Shown one piece after another: positions 41,267-57,264 of a stretch of 64,000 nt of DNA. The translations under genes and the position numbers were made by a program. The stretch is taken from the IMG/VR virus record IMGVR_UViG_3300043449_002710, positions 62,001-126,000 of that record. The stretch is one strand, 5' to 3'. The notes under the pieces are model-generated. The model ran no database searches. It saw nothing but the letters and a program-made list of their open reading frames with translations, and was not told the origin of the DNA. Positions within the stretch are counted from its first letter, which is position 1. Each line of letters opens with the position of its first letter.

Positions 41267-41545
41267 TCACTTCTCCTCCAGTTCGTCAGAACTGACCAGC
41301 GCGGCTCTGGCGTCTTTCAGCATGTTGTCGATTAAAAATCTGCCCATGTGAAATGCGACGATAGTGCGAATCGTGGGGTCAAACTCTTCAAGATTGCGTG
41401 GAGGACAAAAATCTTCGGAGTATGCGCGACGGTAATTTTTGAGATACTGAATGACTTCTTTTAAAGTTTCTGTACGTTCGCTCATTTCCCCTCCAGAGCT
41501 GATCGGCCCTTTTTTATTGTATGATTCCGCCTGCGCCTGTTCCAC
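41267..41545 (-). CDS. hypothetical protein
   Basis: GGAGGGG RBS before internal MSERTE start. Confidence 0.5.
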   Translation of the reverse strand: MEQAQAESYNKKGPISSGGEMSERTETLKEVIQYLKNYRRAYSEDFCPPRNLEEFDPTIRTIVAFHMGRFLIDNMLKDARAALVSSDELEEK

Positions 41546-42602
41546 CCGTCATTGGAATCAATCCAACTCCAGCACTAAAACTTCCGTTGATGGTCCCAGG
41601 CAAGTAGGAACCTATGGCATGAGCTTGGGTGTAATCCATCAAAGCCGCATAGAAAACATTTTGAAGCGGGCCTTCTGCTCCGGTTTGAGACTTTACCTGA
41701 CTTGCGCAATCTTCCCCAATCAAAGTCCCGCCTGAGATATAGGTGTAAGTGACCTCGATAGTAGTATGTGTGTCCACAGAGAAAAAAAGATTCTTTCCAC
41801 GAAACTGAGGAGCAAGCGTAGTGTTATTGGAAACTCGACTGATGCTTAAGGGGAGCTGAGTCAAGGTCACACTGTTTCCAGCAAATTGATTGGGCTCAAA
41901 GGACTCGACCGTGTCTACCGAAACATCATCGATTAGATCCCAATAAGTATAAAACACTTGGATCGGCAACGGGACACTTTGTAGGGGAGTATTACTGAGA
42001 GTGACTGTCTTGCCTAGGAATGAAAAAAGTAAATCGCTGGCTGTGACTCGGATCGAATCCGGGTCCACAGGCTGATGATTTAATGCCACGTATTTCTGCC
42101 CTACGATCCCGGTTTCATCTCCAGTGGAGTCGGTTAAGAAATCTGAAATCTTAAAGGAAACCGTTTCTTCTTGCAGCTTGTTGAAAGTGCCTTTGACGCC
42201 ACTCCCAAGCGTTAAGACCCCAGGGGAAAGCGGGGTGTTGGTGGATACCCCAAGGATAGTCCCAAAGGCGAAACTCATCTTGCCCGAGTTCATCACGTAA
42301 TTGATCACAGCCGTATTCTCTGGCATCACAAGCGGGCCCTTCAAAGCGGGAAGCGCAATCGCGGTCATCAGAGCCGGGATCAAAGTCGCTTTCCCCTCGC
42401 TAGCCGATCCTGTGACCACATTCAGTAGGCTCACCGCTTGAACCGTGCCAGAAGCGTTATTTAAAATCCCGGCCTTCAGACATGCACAAAATCCTTCGGC
42501 ATACGCAACCATCGCTTCAGGAAGCTGAACCTGACCATCTTTGTCAGGGGGTGCCCCCAAGACTCGGTAGAGAAGCTCGGCTAAGTCTTGGGCTATGAGC
42601 AT
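41514..42602 (-). CDS. virion protein downstream of spike gene
   Basis: 362 aa, coupled to the spike-like gene; LNHQPVDPDSIRV motif also found in the sheath. Confidence 0.55.
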   Translation of the reverse strand: MLIAQDLAELLYRVLGAPPDKDGQVQLPEAMVAYAEGFCACLKAGILNNASGTVQAVSLLNVVTGSASEGKATLIPALMTAIALPALKGPLVMPENTAVINYVMNSGKMSFAFGTILGVSTNTPLSPGVLTLGSGVKGTFNKLQEETVSFKISDFLTDSTGDETGIVGQKYVALNHQPVDPDSIRVTASDLLFSFLGKTVTLSNTPLQSVPLPIQVFYTYWDLIDDVSVDTVESFEPNQFAGNSVTLTQLPLSISRVSNNTTLAPQFRGKNLFFSVDTHTTIEVTYTYISGGTLIGEDCASQVKSQTGAEGPLQNVFYAALMDYTQAHAIGSYLPGTINGSFSAGVGLIPMTGGTGAGGIIQ

Positions 42603-44610: not shown

Positions 44611-45435
44611 TTGGGGAGGCTTACCCTTATGGATTTACTCAAGAAAATGACCGAATTTTTCTCGGGTCTTTATCTGCAAGCAATCACCAAGCAAGAACCC
44701 GCGAGGCCAAATCCTGAAGTCACCCTCTCGGCTATTAGGGAAGCCATCGATCCCAAAGAAGCCCCTTTAGAAGTGATCGCTCAACCCCCAGTAGCTGAAG
44801 TCACAAAGCTCACCAATTTACCCGAACAAGTCTTGTGGTGCCCTTTTGCGGTGAAACGTAAAGAAGCGATGACCACTCGCGGCAAGTACAGAAAGGGCTA
44901 CCCTGAAGGGGCAATCGTTCACTTTACGAGCGGCTCATCGGCTGAAAGTTCCTTTCAGCATGGGTTGAGATCGGGGTATTGTTTTTTTGTCATTCATGAG
45001 GATGGAACGATCTGGCAATCTTTTCCATTAGACTCTTGGGGTTATCATGCGGGCGAATCCTTCCACCCTAAATTAGGCAACGGGGTATCTCGTTATCTAG
45101 TTGGGATTGAAATTTCAAATGCTGGGGTTTTGACAAAAAAACCAGACGGTACTTTTGAAACTTGGTTCGGAAGATTGATCCCATCTTCTCAGGTCAGGCA
45201 TATCCCTAAAAAAATGGAAAACATGCAGCCTGGATATTATGCAAGATACACAGAGAACCAAGAGCAGAGTTTAAGAAAATTGGTTCAATGGCTAAAGATG
45301 AACCACCCCACGGTTTTTGATTACTCTTTGGTTCTTGGGCACGATGAGGTTGCGCCACAAAGGAAATCAGATCCCGGTGGGGCTTTATCCGTCACCATGG
45401 TTGACTTCAGGGATTCTTTGAAAAAGAGCGTCTAA
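44611..45435 (+). CDS. N-acetylmuramoyl-L-alanine amidase (Amidase_2), probable endolysin
   Basis: IVHFT, FVI..DGTI.Q......YHAG, VGIE, LGH.EVAP.RK.DPG Zn-amidase motifs; likely start ATG 44629. Confidence 0.88.
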   Translation: MGRLTLMDLLKKMTEFFSGLYLQAITKQEPARPNPEVTLSAIREAIDPKEAPLEVIAQPPVAEVTKLTNLPEQVLWCPFAVKRKEAMTTRGKYRKGYPEGAIVHFTSGSSAESSFQHGLRSGYCFFVIHEDGTIWQSFPLDSWGYHAGESFHPKLGNGVSRYLVGIEISNAGVLTKKPDGTFETWFGRLIPSSQVRHIPKKMENMQPGYYARYTENQEQSLRKLVQWLKMNHPTVFDYSLVLGHDEVAPQRKSDPGGALSVTMVDFRDSLKKSV

Positions 45436-45741
45436 TTATCGGCCTTTTCTTTTCTTAGACAGCCGCTCTTCGGTTTCATCGTGTGCATCAGCCGGGTCGT
45501 ATTTAGGCTGCTTTTTCTTTTTGTCTTTTTTAACTTCTCTCGAAATGGCATCCGAGATCTTTGTGATGTGAACGGCGTTGACGGTGATCAGGGAATTTCT
45601 ACCTGCTTCGGGAGGTATCTTCACTAGCCAGTGAGTGCCATAGGCGATTCCAACTAATTCGCCTAGACCCGTGTAACCTGATTTAGAACAGGTGACTTCT
45701 ACGCAATCTCCTTCGTTCAGGAGCTTCATGCTTACCACCAT
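45436..45741 (-). CDS. hypothetical SH3-like/basic protein
   Basis: 101-aa ORF, GD.VEV...G.GELVG pattern, Lys-rich tail. Confidence 0.5.
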   Translation of the reverse strand: MVVSMKLLNEGDCVEVTCSKSGYTGLGELVGIAYGTHWLVKIPPEAGRNSLITVNAVHITKISDAISREVKKDKKKKQPKYDPADAHDETEERLSKKRKGR

Positions 45742-45854: not shown

Positions 45855-47519
45855 GTGGGGATGAGGCATAACCAAAAATACACAACTGAACAGATCAATA
45901 CCTTGATCTTAGCTCGGGGTTATTTGGTTGACCCGGAATTTGTGTGGTTGGGAGCTAACAAAAGCGATATTTCTTTTTTTTGTCCCCGCCATGGCAAGAG
46001 GACTACACATTGGTCCAATTTCCGAAAAGGAAAAAGTTGTAAGTTGTGCGCTAGCGAGCAACAAGCTCAGAAAAAAATCAGTAAAATCGATTGGCCTACC
46101 CGGGTTAACGAACTTTTAAATGAAAGAAATTTTAGCCTGCTAGAAAGACCTGAAACACTTTATTCTTTCGCTAAAATAAAAGTACGCTGTAATGTGGATC
46201 AGCACGAGTGGTGGACTTGCTACAACCACCTAAAAGCGCACAAAAAAGGTTGTTTGGTTTGCGCGGGTTTATTGAAAACTTCTTTTACCGAGGTTAAAAA
46301 GAAACTGCAGGAAGAAGAGTTTAAAGTTACTGGGGATCTTCTTCCTATTACTTTCAACAGCCAAACTCCAATAGAAGTGATTTGTCCCCAAGGGCACGCT
46401 ACAACCACCAATGCAAACAAAGTGCAGCGAGGTTATGGCTGCAAATATTGCGCTGAAAAAGCACTCACCCAAGAAGAGGTCATACAACGCCTTAAAACAC
46501 GTGGGTTCACAAGCACGGATTCGTACAAAGGAGTGCATACTCCAATGCACTTAGTTTGCGAAAATGGGCACGATGTTTTTAAGTCCTACATGGCGATATG
46601 GCATGATGAAACTCAGTGCTCCTCTTGTCGTCCCCCTTATTCATCTAAGCCGGAAGAAGAAATTTCCTCTTGGCTGAAGACTCTCCTCCCAGAAAACGAT
46701 ATTTTAAGAAGCGATCGGATTCTTTTGGATGGGAATGAAGTGGACATTTACATTCCTTCCAAAAAGCTGGGGATTGAATTCAATGGTCTTTATTTTCATA
46801 CAGAAATTGCCTTGATGCGATCGGGGCGCACACTTCTGGAAGCTCAAGCTTACCATCAGAGTAAAACGGTTCGTGCGGCCCAAAAAGGGGTTCAGCTCAT
46901 CACCCTATGGGATTTCGAATGGGAGATGCGGCAGCAGGCTGTGAAAACAAGATTGAAATCTCTGTTGGGCCTAAATTCATTTAGAGTGGGTGCAAGAAAG
47001 ACCACACTCAGGTCTTTGAATAAAAATGAGTGGAGAACAGTTCGGGATTTCCTAAACACTTACCACATTCAAGGCTCAGCTTCTTTTAAGTATGCTTACG
47101 GGCTTTTTTTAAAAGACGAGTTGGTCAGCGTCATGACTTTTCAAAATCACCACAGACAAAACGTGGATAGAGGCACTTTGGTTTTGAATCGTTATTGTGT
47201 GAAAGAAGACTTTTCTATTAGTGGAGGAGCTACAAAACTCTTTCAATATGCACACAAAGAACTGTCATGCCCCATCTTGAGTTATTCTGACAATCGTTGG
47301 TCCACGGGTGATGTGTATGAAAAATTGGGATTTACTGCCATCAAAAGATCCAGGCCTGATTATTTTTACTCTTTTAGGGGGAAGGGACCTTTTTCGAAGC
47401 AGTCATTAAAGAAAACGCCCGAAGAAAGAAAGTCTGATAAAACAGAACGGGATTTGCGATTGGAACAGGATTACCAGCGGGTTTGGGACTGCGGAAAGAT
47501 CACTTGGCTTTATAAATAA
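45855..47519 (+). CDS. putative free-standing homing endonuclease (Hef-like): Zn-ribbon repeats + PD-(D/E)XK + GNAT-like domain
   Basis: Four C..GH...C..C repeats; S.PE.EI, EVDIYIPSKKLGIEFNGLYFH; C-terminal YSDNRWS.G.VY..LGF..PDY...DCG. Confidence 0.75.
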   Translation: MGMRHNQKYTTEQINTLILARGYLVDPEFVWLGANKSDISFFCPRHGKRTTHWSNFRKGKSCKLCASEQQAQKKISKIDWPTRVNELLNERNFSLLERPETLYSFAKIKVRCNVDQHEWWTCYNHLKAHKKGCLVCAGLLKTSFTEVKKKLQEEEFKVTGDLLPITFNSQTPIEVICPQGHATTTNANKVQRGYGCKYCAEKALTQEEVIQRLKTRGFTSTDSYKGVHTPMHLVCENGHDVFKSYMAIWHDETQCSSCRPPYSSKPEEEISSWLKTLLPENDILRSDRILLDGNEVDIYIPSKKLGIEFNGLYFHTEIALMRSGRTLLEAQAYHQSKTVRAAQKGVQLITLWDFEWEMRQQAVKTRLKSLLGLNSFRVGARKTTLRSLNKNEWRTVRDFLNTYHIQGSASFKYAYGLFLKDELVSVMTFQNHHRQNVDRGTLVLNRYCVKEDFSISGGATKLFQYAHKELSCPILSYSDNRWSTGDVYEKLGFTAIKRSRPDYFYSFRGKGPFSKQSLKKTPEERKSDKTERDLRLEQDYQRVWDCGKITWLYK

Positions 47520-47549
47520 AAAAGGAGGGGAGTTTCCTCCCCTCCTTTT
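47520..47549. terminator. bidirectional Rho-independent terminator
   Basis: AAAAGGAGGGGAG-TTTC-CTCCCCTCCTTTT perfect inverted repeat between convergent genes. Confidence 0.9.
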
Positions 47550-47562
47550 AATGCTAAGCGTC

Positions 47563-50535
47563 TTACTTCAAAGCTACGCCGGTTGAGAAGTCATTGCTGT
47601 TCAGAGCATAAAGTCCGAACAAGCGCTTGATGACGTTTCTCGAATACCAAGCATAGTTGAAGTAAAAGAGAGTCGGATCGTTCTTGTCTTGGAAGACAAT
47701 GATGTCCTTGGTCGGATCGAAGTTTCTGTCGTTTCCATCGGCGTCTTGATACTGCCCGATGAGACCGCGAGCCAGAAGACCCCTTAAGATCGAAGCCAAT
47801 TTGCCACGGACAATCGATTTGGCAGCCGTTCCAGAAGCCGGGGTGATGCCCACCAAAGAGGCCATTTCTCTCACCACAACTTTCGTGACAAAATGCCGCT
47901 GAGTCATGACCTGGATCAGGTTGAAGTCCTTGGCGGTATCGACCGTCATGTCTTCACCCCAAGTGTAAACGCCAGGGCTGCCATTGACGTAGTTGATCTG
48001 AGCTTGACCGAGAAGCATGATCTGATCTTTCCGATACATCTCAATCGTGTCAAAGCCGTTGACCAACTGACCTAAGAGGTCTGTAGCAGGGTCAGCGAAA
48101 CTTGCCACCCGAGCCGCACCCGCGAGAGCCACAAACGAACCGTCCAAAGTCACGGTCGTTGTCAGGCCGTTGTCGAGCACGATGGTCTTGGTAGCACGAG
48201 TCGGGGCCACCAAGATTCGAGAGCCGTGAGCAGCCGAATCGCCTGCCACCTGAAGGGTTTTGCGGGCTGTGAAGACCAGAGTGCCTTCGGTATTTTCGTC
48301 TCCGATCGGAGTGCCAATCGGCATACCGAACCAGACCAGATTCGGACGCTGTTCGAATGGATCGTTTCCAATCAGATTCTGATTGAGAACTTCAGACAGA
48401 GCCGCAGGGTAATTCAATAAGCACAGATCCGTAATCCGAGGATAGTTCTTGACCGATTGAACAGCGGCCACGAAATCGGGAATCGAGTACACACCAGAGC
48501 CATCTGTATTCTTAGGTTGAATCAGATAGACGCCTGGGGCGTTGTTGTTCCAAGCAATTTCGTTGCCGATATACAGGTCATTGTCCACAGCAGAAGGAGC
48601 CGCAAAATTACGACCGTCTTCCAAGCGGAGGACCAGATACGGGGTGTTGTAGAAAGACTCTGGACGTAAGAACAGAGTCGTCAGGTAATAAGCCTGACCT
48701 GGATCTGGCTCAGCGCCTTTGGAGGTGTAGGTCACTTTAACTGCAACAGCCGGATCTACTGTGAAGTAGACAAACGGAGTTCCAAACACCCAGTTGAAGC
48801 TGATCTCAGCGTTCGTGTTGTAATTCTTCACACGAATCGAATCATGGTCGGTCGGAACTTTGGAGAGGATCAAATAGCGTTGACCGGCTACTCCTGTGAT
48901 CTGACCGTTCATATCCGTCTTGTAATCGGTGAGCTGACGGATATCTTCAGTCTTGGCTTTCAAAGACCAATCCAAAACGTTGGAAATGAAGATCGCGTAC
49001 TCGAAGATATCGAGGGTAGCGTAGCTTTCCGTGTTTCTGAAAGCAATCGAGACGTTGTCTGGGAGCAAAGCGTAACCGTCTTTGCCAGCAACCAACGGAT
49101 CAAATTCAGCCGTGAAAGTTCCGAAGCGTCCTTCGGTGGTGCTTGTGGAGAAGCCACCGAACAAAGTGACTGCGTCACCCGCCACAATCGGAGCTTGCAG
49201 AGTGAGTTTGTACTCGCGAGCGTCTTTGGCTGTGTAGTAGATGCGAGGAGCCTTGGCGACGATCTCCCAGGTTGTTCCCACAGCAGCAGCCGTAGGGCCA
49301 ATCACGAAATCCAGCTTCACGCCGTCTACCAGTGTAGGCGAAAGGGAAACGAGGTTGTTTTCAGTGACGGTGAAAGAACCCGAGATCGGAAGAACGTCCC
49401 CGTAACGAGCCCAAACAAATTGCATCACCCGAGCCGGGGTCACGCCCGATACGCTCATGAGCTTGATGCGGTATTTGTTGTTCCGAGCGTGGGTGTAAAG
49501 AGCTTCAGGGTTGATCTGGATTCTGAAGTCGTTCTGAAAGCCACCGACGACATAAGGGGTTTCAATGGTGGCGAACTGAGCATTGCCGTAGCGGCTGTCG
49601 ATTTCGACCATGCCTGGGCCGTGCGCTGTTACAACAAACGAGTCACCTGCGACAAAGTTTGCACCGTTGAAATTGAAATCCAAAGCTAAGCCAAATTCCA
49701 AAGCCCCTGACAGCGAACCCGTTTCATTGATGGTGAAAGTCGGGAAAGTGTCGAGTGCAGCAAGCGGAACCGGAGGAGCGGCATAGTTACCACCCGAAAG
49801 GGGTGTTGCAGTCCAGTGGAAAGTAGCGGTACGAGAACCCACAGCGCCCGAAGCGCTTGTGCAGGTCACCGTGTATTTTCTAGAATAAGCGTGAACAAAG
49901 CTTGCTGTTGGAGAAACCAGAGCAGAGCCTGTGGAGCCCGGCTGCAAAGTCGCGGCCACGGTTCCGAAGTAAGCTGCCGGATGTACGTTGGCGGCGTCCG
50001 CAGTCACTGGGCTGAAAGAAGCCGGGACAAAGTAATCTTTGTATTCTGTGTATTGGCTTGAATCCAACTGATTGCCAATGAACCGGATCTGACGGATCTC
50101 AGAAACCGGGATCGGGTCCTGAACCGCACGATCATTCGATTGGTAATCGAGGTAGTAGGTCGCCAATGCGTCAAACGACTCATCTCGAATCTGAATCGAG
50201 AGGTATTTGCCGCCTGTTGAAAGATACTGCCACTCTTCTTGGCGAAGCTCGGTGCCGTCTTGTTTGAACAAGCGGTTGGGCTTCAGCTTTGCGCCTGTGG
50301 CTTCGTGGAGCAGCAGAGCGACATAAGGGGCGGAGTTAGAAAACGTCAACTGCTCGCCTTGGATGAAGGCCCTGATGATCGGGCTGTTTTTAGCTACAGC
50401 TAAACGAGATCCCTTGGCGATGATGGCCGGGATACGGGCATCAGCGGAAAGATTCGTGCTTTCAGGGTTCAGAATCTGCCCCACATAAGCGCCCGGTTCA
50501 GTGTAACGGGATGTTGTTAATGTCAAATTAGCCAT
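47563..50535 (-). CDS. tail sheath protein
   Basis: EPGAYVGQI N-terminus; C-terminal DGSFVA.A.AA, L....V.GF, GV..WGED.T, IQVM...FV...R sheath domain; 990 aa. Confidence 0.88.
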   Translation of the reverse strand: MANLTLTTSRYTEPGAYVGQILNPESTNLSADARIPAIIAKGSRLAVAKNSPIIRAFIQGEQLTFSNSAPYVALLLHEATGAKLKPNRLFKQDGTELRQEEWQYLSTGGKYLSIQIRDESFDALATYYLDYQSNDRAVQDPIPVSEIRQIRFIGNQLDSSQYTEYKDYFVPASFSPVTADAANVHPAAYFGTVAATLQPGSTGSALVSPTASFVHAYSRKYTVTCTSASGAVGSRTATFHWTATPLSGGNYAAPPVPLAALDTFPTFTINETGSLSGALEFGLALDFNFNGANFVAGDSFVVTAHGPGMVEIDSRYGNAQFATIETPYVVGGFQNDFRIQINPEALYTHARNNKYRIKLMSVSGVTPARVMQFVWARYGDVLPISGSFTVTENNLVSLSPTLVDGVKLDFVIGPTAAAVGTTWEIVAKAPRIYYTAKDAREYKLTLQAPIVAGDAVTLFGGFSTSTTEGRFGTFTAEFDPLVAGKDGYALLPDNVSIAFRNTESYATLDIFEYAIFISNVLDWSLKAKTEDIRQLTDYKTDMNGQITGVAGQRYLILSKVPTDHDSIRVKNYNTNAEISFNWVFGTPFVYFTVDPAVAVKVTYTSKGAEPDPGQAYYLTTLFLRPESFYNTPYLVLRLEDGRNFAAPSAVDNDLYIGNEIAWNNNAPGVYLIQPKNTDGSGVYSIPDFVAAVQSVKNYPRITDLCLLNYPAALSEVLNQNLIGNDPFEQRPNLVWFGMPIGTPIGDENTEGTLVFTARKTLQVAGDSAAHGSRILVAPTRATKTIVLDNGLTTTVTLDGSFVALAGAARVASFADPATDLLGQLVNGFDTIEMYRKDQIMLLGQAQINYVNGSPGVYTWGEDMTVDTAKDFNLIQVMTQRHFVTKVVVREMASLVGITPASGTAAKSIVRGKLASILRGLLARGLIGQYQDADGNDRNFDPTKDIIVFQDKNDPTLFYFNYAWYSRNVIKRLFGLYALNSNDFSTGVALK

Positions 50536-50624
50536 CGGATCTCTCCCTCAATACCTTTTTGAAGAAACTTTCTCTCTCTCTTAAAATAATGCAGATTTAA
50601 GAGTACCTAAAATTTTCTAATAAC

Positions 50625-51128
50625 TTACTTCATTAGTTTTTCGGTTAGCCACGCAATCAGAGCGGTGGTTAAAAAAATACCTAGCGTGGGGCCTAAAATT
50701 GTTTTCACGGTGTCGATGATTTCATCGAGCAAACTGACTTCTTGAAACCCTTTATCCGACCAGTTTTTTAGGAGCTTATTGATCTGTACGGTTTCGACTT
50801 TCAGGCTCTTGGTGTTTTGAACGACCACGTCATCGGCCACGAGTCGGAGGATCTTATATTTTTCTTTGGACTTAGCGGACGAGGAGAAGGTCTTGCCTGG
50901 GAGGATCGAGTAGCGATTCAAAGGTTTTGTGGCAGCTACGATCCGGTTGCCCGAGCAATCCATTTCATTCAAAACAATCTGTAGATGCTCTTTTTCTTTC
51001 TCTTTGGCATCGGAAAGAGCTGCGTGGATTTTTGGGGCTATCGACTCATAGAAGAAAGGTCTAGTCACTTGCTTTTGATCCATCCAATCAGTCCGGTCCA
51101 GAAGAGCATGAAGATCCCGTACATCCAA
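50625..51128 (-). CDS. hypothetical protein with C-terminal TM anchor
   Basis: C-terminal ILGPTLGIFLTTALIAWL. Confidence 0.6.
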   Translation of the reverse strand: MDVRDLHALLDRTDWMDQKQVTRPFFYESIAPKIHAALSDAKEKEKEHLQIVLNEMDCSGNRIVAATKPLNRYSILPGKTFSSSAKSKEKYKILRLVADDVVVQNTKSLKVETVQINKLLKNWSDKGFQEVSLLDEIIDTVKTILGPTLGIFLTTALIAWLTEKLMK

Positions 51129-51364
51129 GTGCGGTCACGTTTGATCTGAACAATCTCTTTTTCGTTGTCTTGAATCTTTTTACTAATTAAGCTTTGATTC
51201 TCTCGGATGAGTTTTTCTAGCTCAGAGTAATTGGCTCTTCTCTCTTGGCTATGCTGCTCTAGGATCTCTTTCAAAGAGCACAACTCTTTTTGAGTGATGA
51301 GCGTTCGCTCATCAATTCTACCCAATTTCTCTTGGAGATCGGATAAATTCCGAGATGACGACAT
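51065..51364 (-). CDS. coiled-coil protein with C-terminal TM (holin/XhlA-like candidate)
   Basis: LGRIDER..coiled coil..WMYGIFMLFWTGLIGWI. Confidence 0.5.
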   Translation of the reverse strand: MSSSRNLSDLQEKLGRIDERTLITQKELCSLKEILEQHSQERRANYSELEKLIRENQSLISKKIQDNEKEIVQIKRDRTWMYGIFMLFWTGLIGWIKSK

Positions 51365-51376
51365 AATTCAACCCCT

Positions 51377-51712
51377 TCAAACCATCTTCCCTGAGATTTT
51401 AAAGGCTGCGTACTTGGCCACTTCTTGTGACTCGAAAGGCCCTTCTAGGAAACGGAATTCGGAATTCTCCAATCCTGCTTCCACGGGTTCGAAGGATTGA
51501 AAGACCAAAGGGTTTTGATTTTTGTCCTTCGGAAATCCCACGTACCAGTCCGAGATACATGCTTTGGACACATAGATTTTTTGGGCGTGATTCTTTGCAT
51601 ATTGAACGGATCTATTCATGGCATGAGATAAGACATCAAACCGTGAGATGACCACACCACAATGCTTCAATTCGTATCGACCTTCTTCGTTTCTATCCAA
51701 AAGCAAGCTCAT
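51377..51712 (-). CDS. hypothetical protein
   Basis: 111-aa ORF. Confidence 0.55.
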   Translation of the reverse strand: MSLLLDRNEEGRYELKHCGVVISRFDVLSHAMNRSVQYAKNHAQKIYVSKACISDWYVGFPKDKNQNPLVFQSFEPVEAGLENSEFRFLEGPFESQEVAKYAAFKISGKMV

Positions 51713-51787
51713 GAATAGAAAATAACTCGAACTGAACTTATTTTAAGAAAGGAGCAAAGGAAGGCTCCCAGAAAGCAGAAATGACCG

Positions 51788-52024
51788 GTGCTAAGACACA
51801 AGAAGGATAGTACGATTATCGCTTACTTGCTCAAGGACAAAAACGGGAATTATTTTCACGCGGAATTAGAGGATATCACGGAAGACGGGCTGATTTTTAA
51901 AGTAACGGATAAAGAACTAGCTCAAAGCGGTCATTTTCCAGACAACTATATTGACTCAAGGTACTTGGATGCTTTGGGTCTAACTCTGATTTGGGTTCTG
52001 GAAGAGCCCATGCAAGAGCACTAA
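51788..52024 (+). CDS. hypothetical protein
   Basis: 78-aa ORF divergent from 51712, ends at a terminator. Confidence 0.5.
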   Translation: MLRHKKDSTIIAYLLKDKNGNYFHAELEDITEDGLIFKVTDKELAQSGHFPDNYIDSRYLDALGLTLIWVLEEPMQEH

Positions 52025-52057
52025 AAAGAAAGCCCCACGCCTTTCGGTGTGGGGCTT
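52025..52057. terminator. Rho-independent terminator (U-tract on minus strand)
   Basis: AAGCCCCACGCC-TTTC-GGTGTGGGGCTT stem with an A run on the left. Confidence 0.8.
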
Positions 52058-52066
52058 AATCAAAAA

Positions 52067-53115
52067 TTAAAGATTGTAGGTACTCATGAGAGAAGCTTCG
52101 ATCGATGCACGATCAGTATCTCCCAGTGCTTTATTATAAATACGGAATTCGCAGATCTTGGCATTTAACCGATCCTGATCTGTAAAACCTCTTTGCCCGA
52201 TAGCTGTTTGACCTATGCCATTAGATGGCATGGGGAAACCGGCTCCTTGCAGAGCTTTCAAATCATAGCTTGCCCAACTGCTAACTGTGTATCTCAATGT
52301 TCCATTTTTATACACTTTGAGAGAATTTGAACTTTGGACGATTGAGACTAGAGAGTTTCCAGACCAGTTTGAAAAGCTGTCCACAGGATCAAGACTAGCT
52401 GGTTCAGTTTGTGAGTAAGACATCTGCTTAACAGCATAAACATCAGTAGTAATTGGACAGATCGGCGACCAGGAAAGCCCCAAAGAATTGGTAGAATGAC
52501 CAATCAGATCTTGGTAGTATTCCGAAGAAACCCAGTCAGCCACAACAGCAAAAATTGTAGCTTCAGAACTAGAAAACATCGAGGCCGAGCCAATCGCGTT
52601 TGGAAACACGAGACCGCCAGAACCAAATACCATTCCAGGATATCCATTCAAACTTGTAGCCGTGGTAATTGTTCCATCAACAGTCGGAGTTTGAATCGGG
52701 GAGTCTGACACCATATTCAGGATTGTAAGCCGTGAGCATTGAAGCTGGGATAGTATAGACGCCATTGTCGTAAGAGGTTCCAGTAATCTGATAAACTAGA
52801 CCCGATAAATCGATGCCATCTGTCATTATCGACAAGAAGCACTTTTTCTACAATCCAGGCATCTTTGGCAGAAGAAGAAAATACAATACTCGAAATTGGA
52901 TTGTTCTGCGAGTAATCAAATTTGAAAACTTTCGTTTGTCTTCCTGTTATAGACGCATAATGAACAAATACCGATTTAATATCGTTGTTGGATAAAGAAT
53001 TATCTCCCGTTTGAGATACGTAGTTCGCTAAGATAGTGGGGATTTGATTTTTGTTTAAAAAAACTGGGACGGAAGCTCCTTTCGAAGGAGCTGTAGGGAA
53101 ATTTAATAGATTCAT
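52067..53115 (-). pseudogene. family X copy 3, apparently split by frameshifts; C-terminal LamG-like domain
   Basis: N-domain homologous to 39515/40255 ends abruptly at LVDND (~52822); protein-like sequence continues in a second frame (52826-52677), then in ORF 52765-52067 (LNGYPGMVF, ICEFRIYNKAL...R..IE..L). Confidence 0.55.
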
Positions 53116-53130
53116 TTTTCTTTTCCATTC

Positions 53131-53163
53131 AAAAAAAGTGGCGCAAATTAGAATTTGCGCCAC
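53131..53163 (-). terminator. Rho-independent terminator after tail tube gene
   Basis: GTGGCGCAAATT / AATTTGCGCCAC 12-bp stem then 7 U on the minus strand. Confidence 0.85.
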
Positions 53164-53182
53164 ATAATTTAAAAAATTTTAA

Positions 53183-53704
53183 TTAAAGGACCTTGATGCG
53201 AGAAACGTAGGCGAGCTGGCCAGAGATCTTGTGGATGTAGTTACCGTCAGCGGTCCAGGCTTCGGGGTTTTTGGTTTTGAGCCAGCAACCCGAATACTGA
53301 TAAATCCGATAAGGATCAGTTCCTTTGTAAAGATATTCTTGCACCACAAAAGGACGGGTCTGATCGGTCAGATCCGTGAACACGTCTGCGTAGCCCAAGG
53401 TCTTCTCAAGTTCCTGATCCCAGACTTCGGTGCGAGCGAAGCTCACTGTGAAGCCGGTTGCTTTGCCAGGAACATAATCCACAGGCTTACCCATGGTGAC
53501 TTTGGAAAGCTCATACACGTGCTCGCCATCGCGGTTGTAAGCGCCTTCAGGCTGCCAGGAGTTGATGCGGCCCACAAGATTTCCGCCGACAACCAAGGCG
53601 GCCCCATGGTAGGTCATTGTTGACGGAGAACCCGGGTCGTTAAAATCAATGGATGCGGTCTGGACCCCAAACTTGTTGGTGGCAAAAGGGCTCGGATTTG
53701 GCAT
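53183..53704 (-). CDS. tail tube protein
   Basis: 173 aa; VG.I.S..P....EHVYEL...P.DYVPG....V...RTE.W, PF...E....Y.Y.GCW pattern of myophage tube proteins; near the sheath gene. Confidence 0.75.
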   Translation of the reverse strand: MPNPSPFATNKFGVQTASIDFNDPGSPSTMTYHGAALVVGGNLVGRINSWQPEGAYNRDGEHVYELSKVTMGKPVDYVPGKATGFTVSFARTEVWDQELEKTLGYADVFTDLTDQTRPFVVQEYLYKGTDPYRIYQYSGCWLKTKNPEAWTADGNYIHKISGQLAYVSRIKVL

Positions 53705-53819
53705 GGAAAAGTTCTCCTAAATTTTTAAACTTTTTCTTCTACTCAAATAATAAGCTAGAAAATCGAGCGAAGTTAAAATTGAACTGGTTCTCATCTTTAT
53801 TATAGTGTACTGTTAAAGT

Positions 53820-55583
53820 ATGTTATTTGAAGATGCTTTAAGAGTTGCAAAAACTGCTGGATTGAAAGTTCTAGAAACTGGGCTTGTCAATTCTGCAAAA
53901 AGACAACTGATCGATGTTGTCTGTAAGGCTGGGCACTCACGTAGAATGCCTCGCAATAAATTCAGCAACAGACCCCCTCAAAATTGTCCTGTTTGTTTAA
54001 AAGAACAAGGCCCTGATCTGGATAAAATTCTAACTGATCCTAAAATCAAAACTAGGTTAGATGAGGGGTATCATCTCAAAAAAGCTTTTTCCGAAGATCA
54101 TGAAATCCAGTTAGAAGTTGTCTGCCCACAAGGTCACACCTATTCTATTGCTAAATGGAAATTTACTAAAGGGACTCAATGCGGCTCTTGCTCAGGTAAG
54201 AATCGGGACCTTACTTTTTTTAACATCAAGCAAGAAATGGAAGCCGAGGGTTTTGAAGTTTTATCGAAGGAATATCAAAATCAGTATCAAAAGCTCCATC
54301 TGATTGACCCTGACGGTAACGAACAATGGATCTCGGCAGATTCTTGGAAACGCGGTTATAGGTCAGAGCGAGGACCGACTCAGCAGACTAGAGACCGCAC
54401 AATCGAAGAAGTAAAAAAAGATTTTGAAGCCGAAGGCTATCAGCTTTTGGAAACCAAATTTATCAATGTTAAAACTAAAATGAGAGCAGTATGCCCTAAA
54501 GGGCATGAGTTTCGAGTGCATTGGAATCATTGGAAAGATGCTGGCGTTAGGTGCTCGGTTTGTTTTGGCACCCCTATGATGACTTTAAAAGAAATTCAAG
54601 AGCATCCAGAAACTATCCAATCTGGTTACCAAGCCTTACGCCGAGAGCGGATTGGTGCTCGTTTGGGTTGCGTTTTTTTATGTCCAAAAGGTCATGAATG
54701 GACTTCCACTCTCCCAGATTTTTTTTCAAAAAAATACCGATGTTCCTCTTGTAACCCGAAGTCTAGCTTGGCGGAATTGGAATTCCTAGAAGAAGTGAAG
54801 AAAACATATCCATCGGCAAGAAAAAGTTTGGATTTCGGTTTTGAAATCGACATCTACATTCCCGAGTTAAAATTAGGAATTGAGTATTGTGGTCTTTATT
54901 GGCATTGCGAAAAAGAAAAACAACCTAATGCACATAAGGACAAGTTTTTAAAAGCTCAAAAAAATGGAATCAAGCTGTTGACCATTTTTGAAGACGAGTG
55001 GTTTTATAAAAAAGAAATTGTCTTGCGAAGAATCTTGAGATCCAAAAAGATCTCGGCTCGCGAAACTCAATTCAAAGAGATATCTAAAGTGGAGGCAGAT
55101 AAATTTTTTGAGGAGAATCATCTTCAAGGAAAATCAGCTACTACAACAAAACAGCATTTTGGTCTTTTTTATCTAGGGTCTTTAGTTGGTGCTATTGCGT
55201 ATGGACCCCACCATAGAAAGGATACGGGAGAATGGGTGCTAAGCCGACTTTGTTTTGGAGAATTTGATATTGTCGGGGGTACGGAAAAGTTATTCAAAAA
55301 CAGTCTGCGTTATTTACCTAAAGTCAAACTAATCTCATGGTCCGACAACAGGTATTCTAACGGGTCAGTCTATGCGAGACTAGGTTTTATCAAAGAGGAG
55401 GATTTAGGTCCCGATTACTCTTATGTGAAACCTGGGCATTCCCCAATTCGGGTTTCCAAGCAATCCATGAAAAAAACCAAAGAAGAGCAAGCATCAGGGA
55501 AAACCGAGCACGAACTCCGATTAGCGCAGGATTGGTACAGGATCTACGACTGCGGCAAAATCCGGTGGGCTTACCCACGCTGA
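53820..55583 (+). CDS. putative free-standing homing endonuclease (Hef-like), paralogue of 45855..47519
   Basis: Four intact and one degenerate CP.GH...C..C repeats; SLAE.E, FEIDIYIPELKLGIEYCGLYWH; SWSDNRYS.GSVY..LGF..PDY...YDCG. Confidence 0.75.
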   Translation: MLFEDALRVAKTAGLKVLETGLVNSAKRQLIDVVCKAGHSRRMPRNKFSNRPPQNCPVCLKEQGPDLDKILTDPKIKTRLDEGYHLKKAFSEDHEIQLEVVCPQGHTYSIAKWKFTKGTQCGSCSGKNRDLTFFNIKQEMEAEGFEVLSKEYQNQYQKLHLIDPDGNEQWISADSWKRGYRSERGPTQQTRDRTIEEVKKDFEAEGYQLLETKFINVKTKMRAVCPKGHEFRVHWNHWKDAGVRCSVCFGTPMMTLKEIQEHPETIQSGYQALRRERIGARLGCVFLCPKGHEWTSTLPDFFSKKYRCSSCNPKSSLAELEFLEEVKKTYPSARKSLDFGFEIDIYIPELKLGIEYCGLYWHCEKEKQPNAHKDKFLKAQKNGIKLLTIFEDEWFYKKEIVLRRILRSKKISARETQFKEISKVEADKFFEENHLQGKSATTTKQHFGLFYLGSLVGAIAYGPHHRKDTGEWVLSRLCFGEFDIVGGTEKLFKNSLRYLPKVKLISWSDNRYSNGSVYARLGFIKEEDLGPDYSYVKPGHSPIRVSKQSMKKTKEEQASGKTEHELRLAQDWYRIYDCGKIRWAYPR

Positions 55584-56202: not shown

Positions 56203-57264
56203 ATGTCCAAAATTCAAAACGAAGACATTAAAAGCGTGGCCGAGCTTACTCTTCAAGGGTTGACCGAATCGAGTCTGCCGCACGATGATAAAGTCTTTTT
56301 GACAGCCAATTCACTCAACAAAACTTTATACCAAGCCATCGTGGATGGTGACCTATCGGGGGCAGCGAGCGGAGAGATGAGAAAAGCGCAATACTTTACG
56401 TCGAGCGGAAATTTCACGGTCCCTTCCAATGTCTACGTGGTCTATGTCACGGCCTGGGGCGGCGGGGGTGGTGGGGGCGGGGGCGGAACCTATTCCACGA
56501 ACTCGGGCGGTGGGGGCACGGGTGGAGGCGGGGGCTATTTTATCTATGACCGTTCGGTTTCAGTTACCCCAGCCGAAGTAATTGCAGTCACTATCGGGGG
56601 CGGCGGGGCCGGGGGTTCTTCTAGTGCAGATGGTTCCTCAGGCGGAAATACCTTGTTTGGTTCTTATTTGACGGTTCGAGGGGGCGGTAGCGGTTCCGCA
56701 GGGTCTAATGGAAACGTGAGTAATGCCGCAGGCGGGAGTTTTGTAAAACTCGGAATCACCGCAGGCGGAGGTGGTGGAAGTGGCTACACTGGCCCAGGGG
56801 GTGCGTCTTTAGGAAATTTGGGGGGAACTTCTGTCAACGGCTATGCAGGTTTTGGCGTGGACGGTGGTAGTGGATTGGGCGGCAAACAAGGCCCTGGGGG
56901 CCTTGGGGGTATCTCCTATTCGAGCACGACTAGGAAAGGTTCTGGCGGGGGCGGGGGTGCATCCGGTAGTGGGGGCGGTGCAGGGGGAAGCCTAGAGATC
57001 AATGAAATCGGAATCTGTGGGATCGGCGGGACGGGCGGAACCGGCGGCAATCTAGCCAACGCTTACTGTGGCGGGGGCGGGGGCGGCGGGGCCGGATTCA
57101 ATGGGGATGGCGCAAACGGAGGCTCCTCTGCCGCAGGGAGTTCAGCCTTAAGCAACAGCGGCGCAGGCGGAGGCGGTGGAGCGGGCGGGATCTCCACGAG
57201 TGTGAATGGATATTCAGGGGGCGCAGGCGGATCTGGCGGGTTGATTGTCTATTGGTTTGAGTAA
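56203..57264 (+). CDS. glycine-rich domain virion/fibre-like protein
   Basis: FTSSGNFTVP..V..VYVTAWGGGGGGGGG ... GGAGGSGGLIVY, the phage glycine-rich domain. Confidence 0.75.
   Translation: MSKIQNEDIKSVAELTLQGLTESSLPHDDKVFLTANSLNKTLYQAIVDGDLSGAASGEMRKAQYFTSSGNFTVPSNVYVVYVTAWGGGGGGGGGGTYSTNSGGGGTGGGGGYFIYDRSVSVTPAEVIAVTIGGGGAGGSSSADGSSGGNTLFGSYLTVRGGGSGSAGSNGNVSNAAGGSFVKLGITAGGGGGSGYTGPGGASLGNLGGTSVNGYAGFGVDGGSGLGGKQGPGGLGGISYSSTTRKGSGGGGGASGSGGGAGGSLEINEIGICGIGGTGGTGGNLANAYCGGGGGGGAGFNGDGANGGSSAAGSSALSNSGAGGGGGAGGISTSVNGYSGGAGGSGGLIVYWFE

What the first reader, a model, noticed from the sequence alone, without database searches (positions are those of the whole stretch)
45855..55583. Tail sheath-tube block bracketed by two paralogous Zn-ribbon/nuclease/GNAT-like genes
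Seen: two ~570-aa paralogues in the same orientation, opposite to the structural genes. One is tail-to-tail with the sheath gene (shared terminator), the other head-to-head with the tube gene. Both have tandem C..GH..C..C repeats, a Vsr/DUF559-like EIDIYIP..KLGIE..GLY.H nuclease and a conserved C-terminal domain. Established: free-standing phage homing endonucleases such as Hef/Seg/Mob sit next to the conserved genes they cleave. Inference: each targets the neighbouring sheath or tube allele of competing phages, or together they mobilise the whole ~8 kb tail cassette.
Basis: partly seen in the sequence, partly recalled or inferred. Interest (0 to 1): 0.7.

Follow-up and report, generated by a model that had tools for sequence, protein, structure and literature searches.

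The report
Hef-type homing endonuclease genes beside tail genes
Two selfish-looking nuclease genes of the known phage Hef family sit next to the tail sheath and tail tube genes of an uncultured 223-kb freshwater phage; each is missing from the same spot in close relatives, so this is an ordinary though tidy case of free-standing homing endonuclease genes, not a new mobile tail cassette.

Summary
Two + strand genes, HefA (45861-47519, 552 aa) and HefB (53820-55583, 587 aa), are 35% identical. Each has four C-x2-4-H...C-x2-C zinc modules, a Vsr/EDxHD-type nuclease and a C-terminal GNAT domain whose best structural match is phage Mu Mom. They flank a 990-aa sheath gene and a 173-aa tube-fold gene on the opposite strand.

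They belong to the known Hef family: phrog_559/3339, E about 1e-100. HefA is 33% identical over nuclease plus GNAT to phage U5 Hef, annotated as a homing endonuclease and cited in the literature as cleaving nrdB. The family is very large (24,023 clusters).

Both genes are single-gene presence/absence polymorphisms. The sheath-site copy is present in 3 of 9 relatives' lineages and absent from the nearest one. The tube-site copy is present in 2 of 5. Each site has its own Hef lineage, and a third copy lies next to the prohead protease gene.

The idea that the pair mobilises an 8-kb cassette is not supported. In two relatives sheath and tube lie 41-48 kb apart, occupancy of the two sites could not be compared within any one relative, and no repeats bound the block. 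Cleavage targets were not testable. Verdict: new members of a known kind, low to moderate interest.

The parts
45861..47519 (+). HefA, a Hef-family free-standing homing-endonuclease gene (552 aa from the ATG; an in-frame GTG at 45855 would give 554 aa)
   Evidence: phrog_559 E 1.8e-100 and phrog_3339 E 2.7e-81. 33% identity, E 3e-31, to phage U5 Hef over nuclease plus GNAT. Orthologues at the same site in L004 (52%) and L013 (49%), absent in six other relatives.
45861..46625 (+). HefA N-terminal array of four CHCC zinc modules (aa 1-255), presumed DNA-recognition region
   Evidence: Motif positions. AF2 shows repeated helix plus beta-hairpin modules, pLDDT mostly 80-95. Only a weak Pfam DUF4379 treble-clef hit. 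This is the least conserved part between orthologues, 45%.
46626..46970 (+). HefA Vsr/EDxHD-type nuclease domain (aa about 256-370)
   Evidence: The family profile hits PDB 3r3p (I-Bth0305I) at E 2e-8. E265, E293, D295, E306, H313, H332, K335 and E353 are conserved in 94-100% of 150 family members, and all are present.
46971..47516 (+). HefA C-terminal Mom-like GNAT domain (aa about 371-552)
   Evidence: Foldseek top hit is Mu Mom 8bv8, E 1e-6. VIA-align gives Z 12-14 to GNATs, with 146 residues aligned to Mom. hhalign to Mu Mom gives 93% probability.
47520..47549 (.). Bidirectional intrinsic terminator shared by HefA and the sheath gene
   Evidence: 13-pair stem with 7 GC pairs and a 4-nt loop, A-run on one side and T-run on the other. 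Hef-less relatives have a different hairpin after the sheath stop.
47563..50535 (-). Tail sheath gene (990 aa, unusually long)
   Evidence: Structure-based matches to Phage_sheath_1/1C clusters. 28 relatives at 56-67% identity.
50625..51712 (-). Three small genes (111, 99 and 167 aa) that precede the sheath gene; the 111- and 167-aa genes have homologues in most relatives, the 99-aa gene was matched only in L014 and L019; function unknown
   Evidence: tblastn to L004, L006-L008, L013-L015 and L019.
51788..52024 (+). Conserved 78-aa gene divergent from the sheath operon. It marks the operon's upstream edge in relatives.
   Evidence: Homologues in L004, L007, L008, L013, L014 and L019.
52067..53163 (-). 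Two genes (232 and 148 aa) downstream of the tube gene. No homologue within 10 kb of the sheath in relatives.
   Evidence: No tblastn hit in any sheath locus. Genes of similar size (149 and 226 aa) follow the tube in one relative.
53183..53704 (-). Tail-tube-fold protein gene (173 aa), followed by a terminator-like hairpin at 53138-53163
   Evidence: for the fold. 68-87% identical in 85 relatives. Hairpin.
53705..53819 (.). Divergent intergenic region between the tube gene and HefB
   Evidence: Promoter-like hexamers on both strands. These are consensus matches only.
53820..55583 (+). HefB, a second Hef-family gene (587 aa): zinc modules about aa 1-311, nuclease about aa 312-408, GNAT about aa 409-587
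   Evidence: phrog_559 E 1.1e-93. PDB 3r3p E 0.007, Pfam Mom 24.8 bits and MTES_1575 19.6 bits, all below the cut-offs. An orthologue (528 aa, 57% by tblastn) sits at the same place upstream of the tube in L009; it is absent in three other relatives.
45436..45741 (-). 101-aa gene that directly follows the sheath gene in Hef-less relatives; it marks the far edge of the HefA insertion
   Evidence: 67% identical to the 94-aa gene that starts 56 bp after the sheath stop in L019. Homologues also in L004, L013 and L014.

Best explanation
HefA and HefB are two independent, free-standing homing-endonuclease genes of the Hef family.

Architecture (shown): each protein combines a variable N-terminal array of zinc modules, a Vsr/EDxHD-type metal-dependent nuclease, and a Mom-like GNAT domain. 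Recognition of a long DNA target by the zinc array is inferred.

Inferred mechanism, by analogy with phage U5 Hef and other T-even free-standing endonucleases: during co-infection with a related phage that lacks the gene, the enzyme cuts the rival genome at a conserved sequence in or next to the adjacent gene (the sheath 3' end or downstream junction for HefA; the tube 5' end or upstream junction for HefB). Repair from the Hef-carrying genome then copies the endonuclease gene and the flanking tail-gene allele into the rival.

Each gene acts at its own site. The pair is not a unit.

Shown here: family membership, domain folds, intact catalytic residues, single-gene presence/absence at both sites, site-specific lineages.

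Inferred: cleavage, target position, homing.
For: Family:
- phrog_559/3339 hits at E 1e-70 to 1e-100.
- 446-461 phage records hit, many annotated as Hef-like.
- U5 Hef aligns at 33% identity, E 3e-31.
- Taylor et al. 2011 place Hef in the Vsr-like EDxHD homing family (PMC3239194).

Nuclease residues are intact in both copies.

Mobility signature:
- HefA-type genes are present in the window, L004/L005 and L013, and absent in L006, L007, L008, L014, L015 and L019.
- In L019, the nearest relative (sheath 67% identical, sister to the window with 96% support), the sheath stop is followed after 56 bp by the homologue of the window's 101-aa gene. The window therefore has a clean insertion of about 1.77 kb holding only HefA.
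- At least 2 state changes are needed on the sheath tree.
- HefB-type genes are present in the window and L009. Three other relatives carry a methyltransferase, a Fic gene or small ORFs at that spot.

Site-specific lineages, each with 100% SH-aLRT support: HefA with the sheath-site copies, HefB with the tube-site copy, and a third genomic copy with a second L004 copy.

Other points:
- The third copy lies beside the prohead protease gene.
- GC content is lower than the genome: 40.5-43.2% against 46.2%.
- No intron RNA is nearby.
Against: - No cleavage or homing was or could be observed.
- No target site could be inferred from comparing Hef-plus and Hef-minus alleles.
- The sheath-site Hef has diverged about in step with its flanking genes (52% against 40-64% for window vs L004; 73% against 59-80% for L004 vs L013). 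The record is therefore also compatible with old vertical inheritance plus losses, and with the gene being kept for some benefit to the phage.
- The function of the conserved GNAT domain is not explained by a simple homing model.
- The only sequencing run found holds one Hef-plus contig and shows no Hef-less variant, but contigs cannot show absence.
Confidence: 0.72

Rival explanations
1. The proteins are single-chain restriction-plus-modification enzymes. The Mom-like GNAT domain acylates adenines in the phage's own DNA, and the fused nuclease degrades unmodified host or superinfecting-phage DNA. This is the prediction of Iyer et al. 2021 for REase-Mom fusions in jumbo phages. Their position next to tail genes would then be incidental.
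For: - Iyer et al. describe exactly this fusion in jumbo phages and propose this role (PMC7824862).
- The GNAT domain is Mom-like by structure and profile.
- The counterparts of Mom's essential R111, D149 and R151 are conserved in 147-150 of 150 family members, and S124 in 122 of 150 (essential residues from PMC13219725).
- The sheath-site gene has stayed intact across deep divergence.
Against: - The U5 Hef record is annotated as a homing endonuclease, and a review cites Sandegren et al. 2005 for its cleavage of nrdB. The primary paper could not be read.
- Presence is patchy, one gene at a time, with site-specific lineages. Up to 11-12 matching places per Campylobacter phage genome look like selfish spread rather than a defence module.
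- Both window copies have replaced the Ser that aligns with Mom S124 (T in HefA, E in HefB; each is rare in the family). Mom S124A is the inactive mutant used for the crystal structure.
- U5 Hef has N at the position of Mom D149.
Confidence: 0.15
2. The two genes act as a pair and move the whole sheath-to-tube segment (about 8 kb) between phages as one cassette.
For: - In this genome they do bracket the segment, in the same orientation.
- Homing endonucleases can co-convert flanking DNA, and nuclease genes are reported at boundaries of genetic exchange between phages (PMC10448857; title and abstract only).
- The window and L009 share only the Hef-tube pair, set in otherwise different surroundings.
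Against: - Sheath and tube are 41.5 kb apart (L006/L011) and 47.8 kb apart (L008/L012) in relatives. The tube is also absent from a 106-kb contig that carries the sheath.
- Each site shows its own presence/absence pattern, and no relative could be scored at both sites.
- The genes are different lineages at 35% identity, with no shared DNA repeats.
- Identity to relatives shows no step at the block's edges.
Confidence: 0.04
3. The genes are domesticated DNA-binding proteins (for example regulators of tail-gene expression) that no longer cut DNA.
For: - They lie next to highly expressed late genes.
- They share a terminator (HefA) or a promoter region (HefB) with those genes.
- They have been retained over long divergence.
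Against: - All conserved nuclease residues are intact in both copies.
- Most relatives make the same tail genes without them.
Confidence: 0.05

Closest known systems
Hef of T-even phage U5 (GenBank AY262133; Sandegren, Nord and Sjoberg 2005, cited)
   Same: - Nuclease plus Mom-like GNAT core: 33% identity over about 250 aa, E 3e-31.
- Similar length (544 aa).
- Free-standing gene between two conserved genes.
- The family-typical motifs (ELDIYIP, LAIEY.G.YWH, YH..K, FE.EW, ARK, NH.QG, GGASKL, RIWDCG) are shared.
   Different: - U5 Hef sits between nrdA and nrdB, on the same strand as them; the window copies sit by tail genes on the opposite strand.
- Its N-terminal half has no CHCC zinc-module array.
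Hef-like homing endonucleases of Campylobacter phages (CP30A, NCTC12673 Hef58, F-series) and of Bacillus, Aeromonas and Xanthomonas phages
   Same: - Full-length architecture including the zinc modules: 80-99% query coverage at 26-32% identity.
- Several matching places per genome (up to 11-12).
   Different: - Different hosts and different insertion sites.
- None is close (under 35% identity).
F-LimVIII of Dickeya phage LIMEstone1
   Same: A Hef-like free-standing endonuclease gene listed with the tail tube gene as its neighbour or target (PMC3296691).
   Different: - It is in a T4-related Vi1-like phage.
- Its activity is also untested.
- No sequence comparison was done here for that particular copy.
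I-Bth0305I, prototype of the EDxHD (Vsr-like) homing endonucleases (PDB 3r3p)
   Same: Nuclease fold and the E, D and H active-site residues; the family profile hits it at E 2e-8.
   Different: - It is intron-encoded, with a NUMOD/HTH N-terminus and no GNAT domain.
- Its last motif residue, D222, aligns with a near-invariant His (H332) in the Hef family.
Phage Mu Mom (PDB 8bv8) and the REase-Mom fusions of jumbo phages noted by Iyer et al. 2021
   Same: - GNAT fold, with Mom as the best Foldseek hit.
- Counterparts of R111, D149 and R151 are kept.
- The nuclease-Mom fusion architecture has been described.
   Different: - Mom is a stand-alone enzyme.
- Pfam Mom scores are below the gathering cut-off.
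- The S124 counterpart is T in HefA and E in HefB.
- No evidence of DNA modification here.

Membership tests
Hef-type free-standing homing endonucleases | Significant full-length similarity to the family profile | tested here: met
   phrog_559 at E 1.8e-100 (HefA) and 1.1e-93 (HefB). phrog_3339 at E 2.7e-81 and 1e-69.
Hef-type free-standing homing endonucleases | Homology to the prototype, U5 Hef | tested here: met
   BLASTP of HefA against U5 Hef: 33% identity over 267 columns, E 3e-31. tblastn of HefB: E 1e-17.
Hef-type free-standing homing endonucleases | Free-standing (not in an intron or intein), intergenic, and sporadically present among related genomes | tested here: met
   - No Rfam intron within 15 kb.
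- Clean single-gene indels at both sites.
- At least 2 state changes on the sheath tree.
Hef-type free-standing homing endonucleases | Site-specific double-strand cleavage of the Hef-less allele and preferential inheritance in mixed infection | not testable with these tools
   This needs biochemistry or phage crosses. The allele comparison gave no candidate site.
EDxHD / Vsr-like nuclease fold | Sequence or structure match to I-Bth0305I or Vsr, with the E, D and H catalytic residues | tested here: met
   - Profile against 3r3p: E 2e-8.
- D295 aligns with D196, and H313 with H213.
- E265, E293 and E306 are conserved.
EDxHD / Vsr-like nuclease fold | Final Asp of the EDxHD motif (I-Bth0305I D222) | tested here: not met
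   The aligned family position is His (H332, 142 of 150), followed by an invariant K335. This is a family-wide variation that U5 Hef shares.
Mom family of GNAT enzymes (Pfam PF25680) | Score above the Pfam gathering cut-off | tested here: not met
   HefB scores 24.8 bits against a cut-off of 27.1. HefA has no hit.
Mom family of GNAT enzymes (Pfam PF25680) | GNAT fold closest to Mom | tested here: met
   - Foldseek rank 1 is 8bv8, E 1e-6.
- VIA-align Z 12.3 with 146 residues aligned.
- hhalign probability 93%.
Mom family of GNAT enzymes (Pfam PF25680) | Residues essential for Mom activity (R111, S124, D149, R151) | tested here: inconclusive
   R444, D477 and R479 are kept in both copies. The S124 counterpart is T in HefA and E in HefB, against S in 122 of 150 family members.
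Mom family of GNAT enzymes (Pfam PF25680) | Adenine N6 modification of DNA | not testable with these tools
   No modification-aware data. The only run found is held as contigs.
Contractile-tail sheath and tube (the neighbouring genes) | Sheath fold and tube (Hcp/gp19) fold | tested here: met
   - Sheath: ESM Atlas structural matches.
- Tube: AF2 model plus Foldseek.
- Neither reaches a Pfam threshold.

The most novel reading that the evidence does not exclude
The Mom-like GNAT domain of Hef-type endonucleases may be catalytically active. These enzymes would then be bifunctional: they would cut rival alleles and also chemically mark (momylate) or otherwise protect their own target sites. That would explain how a 'selfish' gene stays intact across deep divergence.

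A second, weaker reading: HefB and the tube gene moved together as a unit into the sheath neighbourhood of this genome. That would make the endonuclease the agent of a 40-50 kb rearrangement of structural genes.
Probability: 0.15. Interest if true: 0.6.

Novelty: new member of a known kind. Interest (0 to 1): 0.3.

Why it matters
- For this genome, it explains two opposite-strand interruptions of the tail gene region and identifies three mobile nuclease genes beside conserved virion genes (sheath, tube, prohead protease).
- It gives clean filled-site and empty-site pairs (window against L019; window and L009 against L011 and L012). These could be used to map the targets of two uncharacterised Hef enzymes.
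- More broadly, the same protein family carries two incompatible published labels: homing endonuclease, and restriction-plus-Mom modification enzyme. Nobody appears to have tested the GNAT domain. With about 24,000 sequence clusters, this is a large and experimentally almost untouched family of sequence-specific nucleases with modular zinc arrays.
- None of this is specific to, or newly revealed by, this window.

Tried and rejected
1. DNA-level relatives in the phage collection: none. Exact-peptide search of IMG/VR with the sheath: none. Relatives came only from the protein databases.
Sheath-tube distances rest on contig coordinates from four look-ups.
3. Looking for co-conversion or a target site. 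Sliding identity along the sheath and codon-level comparison of Hef-plus and Hef-minus alleles showed nothing; divergence is too high.
4. Population polymorphism in reads. One run, held only as contigs, shows a single identical Hef-plus contig, which is uninformative about absence. The second read-laying run was not used.
5. NCBIfam: no hits. Pfam on isolated domains: only sub-threshold zinc-finger and GNAT hits.
6. Intron or ribozyme context: none.
7. Repeats bounding a cassette: none.
8. The Sandegren 2005 primary paper is not held. What is said about U5 Hef activity comes from a review and the GenBank record.
9. Considered and rejected:
- HNH nuclease (the PHROG label): no HNH motif, and the fold is Vsr-like.
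- Recent tandem duplication: the tree rejects it.
- Complex prediction with DNA or CoA was not run, because it cannot establish specificity.

Full report
**Context**

The window is bases 62001-126000 of a 223,260-bp IMG/VR virus record, CheckV completeness 81%. The record comes from a freshwater metagenome. It has no DNA-level relative among 50,697 deposited phage genomes.

**What is there**

Around the finding, a minus-strand run of virion genes is interrupted by plus-strand genes.

- The two long plus-strand ORFs are HefA and HefB. HefA runs from 45855 (GTG) or, more likely, 45861 (ATG, the start used by the public gene call) to 47519. HefB is 53820-55583.
- They are 35% identical over 423 residues, E 3e-60.
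- Each has four C-x(2-4)-H...C-x2-C motifs about 60 residues apart.
- Each then has a nuclease motif and a conserved C-terminal domain.
- HefA converges on the 990-aa ORF 47563-50535. The 43-bp spacer holds a 13-pair GC-rich hairpin with an A-run on one side and a T-run on the other, a terminator usable from both directions.
- HefB diverges from the 173-aa ORF 53183-53704 across 115 bp.

**The tail genes**

- The 990-aa protein has no Pfam or PHROG hit. Its stored ESM Atlas model aligns with sheath clusters (Phage_sheath_1/1C) at TM 0.75-0.82 normalised to the hits.
- The 173-aa protein scored 0.97 to 'phage tail protein' clusters. An AF2 model built on 40 homologues (pLDDT 70.5) gave only tube-fold hits: phage 812 tube at E 4e-6, PVC/AFP/eCIS tubes, T4 gp19 and Hcp.
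- So the sheath and tube calls hold. Whether the 173-aa protein is the major tube subunit or a tube-like accessory is not settled. Its 68-87% identity across the clade suggests a core subunit.

**What the two genes are**

- Both match phrog_559 and phrog_3339 over their whole length, E 1e-70 to 1e-100.
- tblastn finds homologues in 446-461 phage records, many annotated 'Hef-like homing endonuclease'.
- The hits include the prototype. The U5 record AY262133 carries hef (544 aa) between nrdA and nrdB. HefA aligns with it at 33% identity, E 3e-31, across the nuclease and C-terminal domains.
- Hef is cited as a homing endonuclease that cleaves nrdB (PMC2988022). I could not read the primary paper.
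- An exhaustive HMMER scan found 24,023 50%-identity clusters at E <= 1e-3. This is a very large family.

**Domains**

An AF2 model of HefA built on 150 family members is confident: pLDDT 92, pTM 0.71.

- *Nuclease.* A family profile hits PDB 3r3p (I-Bth0305I, the prototype of the Vsr-like EDxHD homing endonucleases) at E 2e-8. Taylor et al. had already assigned phage Hef proteins to that family (PMC3239194).
  - D295 and H313 align with the catalytic D196 and H213.
  - E265, E293, D295, E306, H313, H332, K335 and E353 are 94-100% conserved in the family and present in both window proteins.
  - The last Asp of the EDxHD motif is replaced by His family-wide.
- *C-terminal domain (aa about 379-552).* It is a GNAT fold.
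  - The best Foldseek hit is phage Mu Mom (8bv8, E 1e-6), followed by over a hundred further matches at E <= 0.001; all 50 listed are acetyltransferases.
  - VIA-align gives Z 12-14. hhalign to Mu Mom gives 93% probability.
  - Counterparts of Mom's essential R111, D149 and R151 (PMC13219725) are nearly invariant in the family and present in both window copies. The S124 counterpart is Ser in 122 of 150 members, but Thr in HefA and Glu in HefB.
  - Iyer et al. 2021 had already noted jumbo-phage Mom domains fused to restriction-type nucleases, and read them as restriction plus modification (PMC7824862).
- *N-terminal zinc modules.* They have only sub-threshold Pfam similarity to a treble-clef finger. 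They are the fastest-evolving part.

**Are they mobile?**

Protein searches found a clade of uncultured phages with sheaths 56-67% identical and tubes 68-87% identical. I fetched their contigs.

*Sheath site.*
- A Hef gene sits convergent right after the sheath stop in the window, in L004/L005 and in L013 (550 aa; 52% and 49% identical to HefA).
- It is absent in L006, L007, L008, L014, L015 and L019.
- L019 has the most similar sheath (67%) and is the window's sister on the sheath tree (96% SH-aLRT). There the sheath stop is followed by a hairpin and, 56 bp on, by the homologue (67%) of the window's 101-aa gene 45436-45741.
- The window therefore differs by one insertion of about 1.77 kb that holds only HefA.
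- At least two gains or losses are needed on the tree.

*Tube site.*
- A Hef gene (528 aa, 57% identical to HefB by tblastn) sits divergent upstream of the tube in L009.
- Three other relatives carry a methyltransferase, a Fic gene or small ORFs at that spot.

*Lineages.*
- On a tree of the nuclease-GNAT core, HefA groups with the sheath-site copies and HefB with the tube-site copy, each with 100% support.
- Several unrelated metagenomic proteins are closer to HefA than HefB is.
- So the two are distinct lineages, each tied to its own site, not a recent duplication.

*Third copy.*
- A third, more divergent member (604 aa, phrog_559 E 2.5e-55) has cysteine-free N-terminal repeats.
- It lies outside the window at G000:190865-192679. 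It is opposite in strand to its neighbours and divergent from the head maturation protease gene.

*Composition.* All three copies are somewhat AT-rich: 40.5-43.2% GC against 46.2% for the genome.

**Limits of the homing reading**

- Hef divergence tracks that of the flanking genes. Any transfer was therefore ancient, or the pattern reflects ancestry plus losses.
- I found no co-conversion tract or candidate target.
- The only public run holding this sequence is stored as contigs and shows one Hef-plus form.
- Cleavage and target identity remain inference by analogy.

**The cassette idea**

- In relatives where both genes lie on one long contig, sheath and tube are 41.5 kb apart and on opposite strands (L006/L011, 250 kb), or 47.8 kb apart (L008/L012, 236 kb).
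- A 106-kb contig carrying the sheath has no tube gene.
- The tube's neighbours differ in every relative. The genes flanking Hef-tube in L009 map about 47 kb away in this genome.
- The window and L009 share only the Hef-tube pair. This hints that this pair can travel together, but it does not make the sheath-to-tube block a unit.
- No repeats bound the block, and no intron RNAs are present.
- The close sheath-tube spacing is a peculiarity of this genome, and the bracketing looks coincidental.

**Verdict**

- These are new members of a well-populated, already named family. The zinc-array, nuclease and Mom-like GNAT domains each have published or annotated precedents, and there is a published precedent for a Hef-like gene next to a tail tube gene (PMC3296691).
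- The unresolved and more interesting question, what the Mom-like domain does in a homing endonuclease, belongs to the whole family and not to this locus.

Noticed in passing
G000:C1:190865-192679 (-), outside the window; locus L017:4366-6177 (-): A third Hef-family gene (604 aa). Its N-terminal repeats have lost the cysteines (repeated F-x-D-x-x-[YF]-G-E-[WY]-W ... H-P-K-R units). It lies opposite in strand to its neighbours, next to the head maturation protease gene and downstream of two PAPS-reductase-like genes. Its nearest relative is a second Hef copy in L004 (42%), which sits at a different site.
   Followed up: partly
window 50535-53183, compared with L006/L011 and L008/L012: Sheath and tube genes are 2.6 kb apart here but 41-48 kb apart in two relatives with near-complete contigs. 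The tube's surroundings differ in every relative examined. Only the Hef-tube pair is shared between the window and L009.
   Followed up: partly
window 44611-45435 (+): An Amidase_2 endolysin-like gene (274 aa) on the opposite strand, between the 219-aa and 101-aa genes. The same slot holds non-homologous cell-wall enzymes in relatives: Peptidase_M15_3 in L004 and L013, CHAP plus PG_binding in L006, CHAP in L015. L019 has a patatin-like gene there instead.
   Followed up: partly
window 47563-50535 (-): The sheath protein is 990 aa, about twice the usual size, and escapes all Pfam and PHROG sheath models. The sheath-like core is split between the N- and C-terminal parts, with about 500 residues of inserted domains. 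The C-terminal 100 residues are the most conserved part (70-81%).
   Followed up: no
window 56203-57264 (+): A glycine-rich protein (Pfam Gly_rich_2; PHROG tail fibre / tail fibre assembly) in a local GC-rich stretch (55%), just beyond HefB.
   Followed up: no
relative contig cVvah72p (62.8 kb, no DNA served), about 10 kb upstream of its tube gene: A 1023-aa product with weak Hint_2 and LAGLIDADG_3 hits. This suggests an intein with a homing endonuclease in a relative, so other classes of mobile nuclease may also circulate in this phage clade.
   Followed up: no
window 53128-53173: A strong hairpin plus T-run immediately after the tube gene stop. It overlaps the GTG start assigned mechanically to the 148-aa ORF, so that ORF's true start is probably further downstream.
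   Followed up: no
window 41514-42602 (-) and sheath genes of relatives: A short stretch (aa 151-220) of the 362-aa protein matches an internal part of the sheath proteins of relatives (35-58% identity over 36-84 aa). This may be a shared inserted domain.
   Followed up: no
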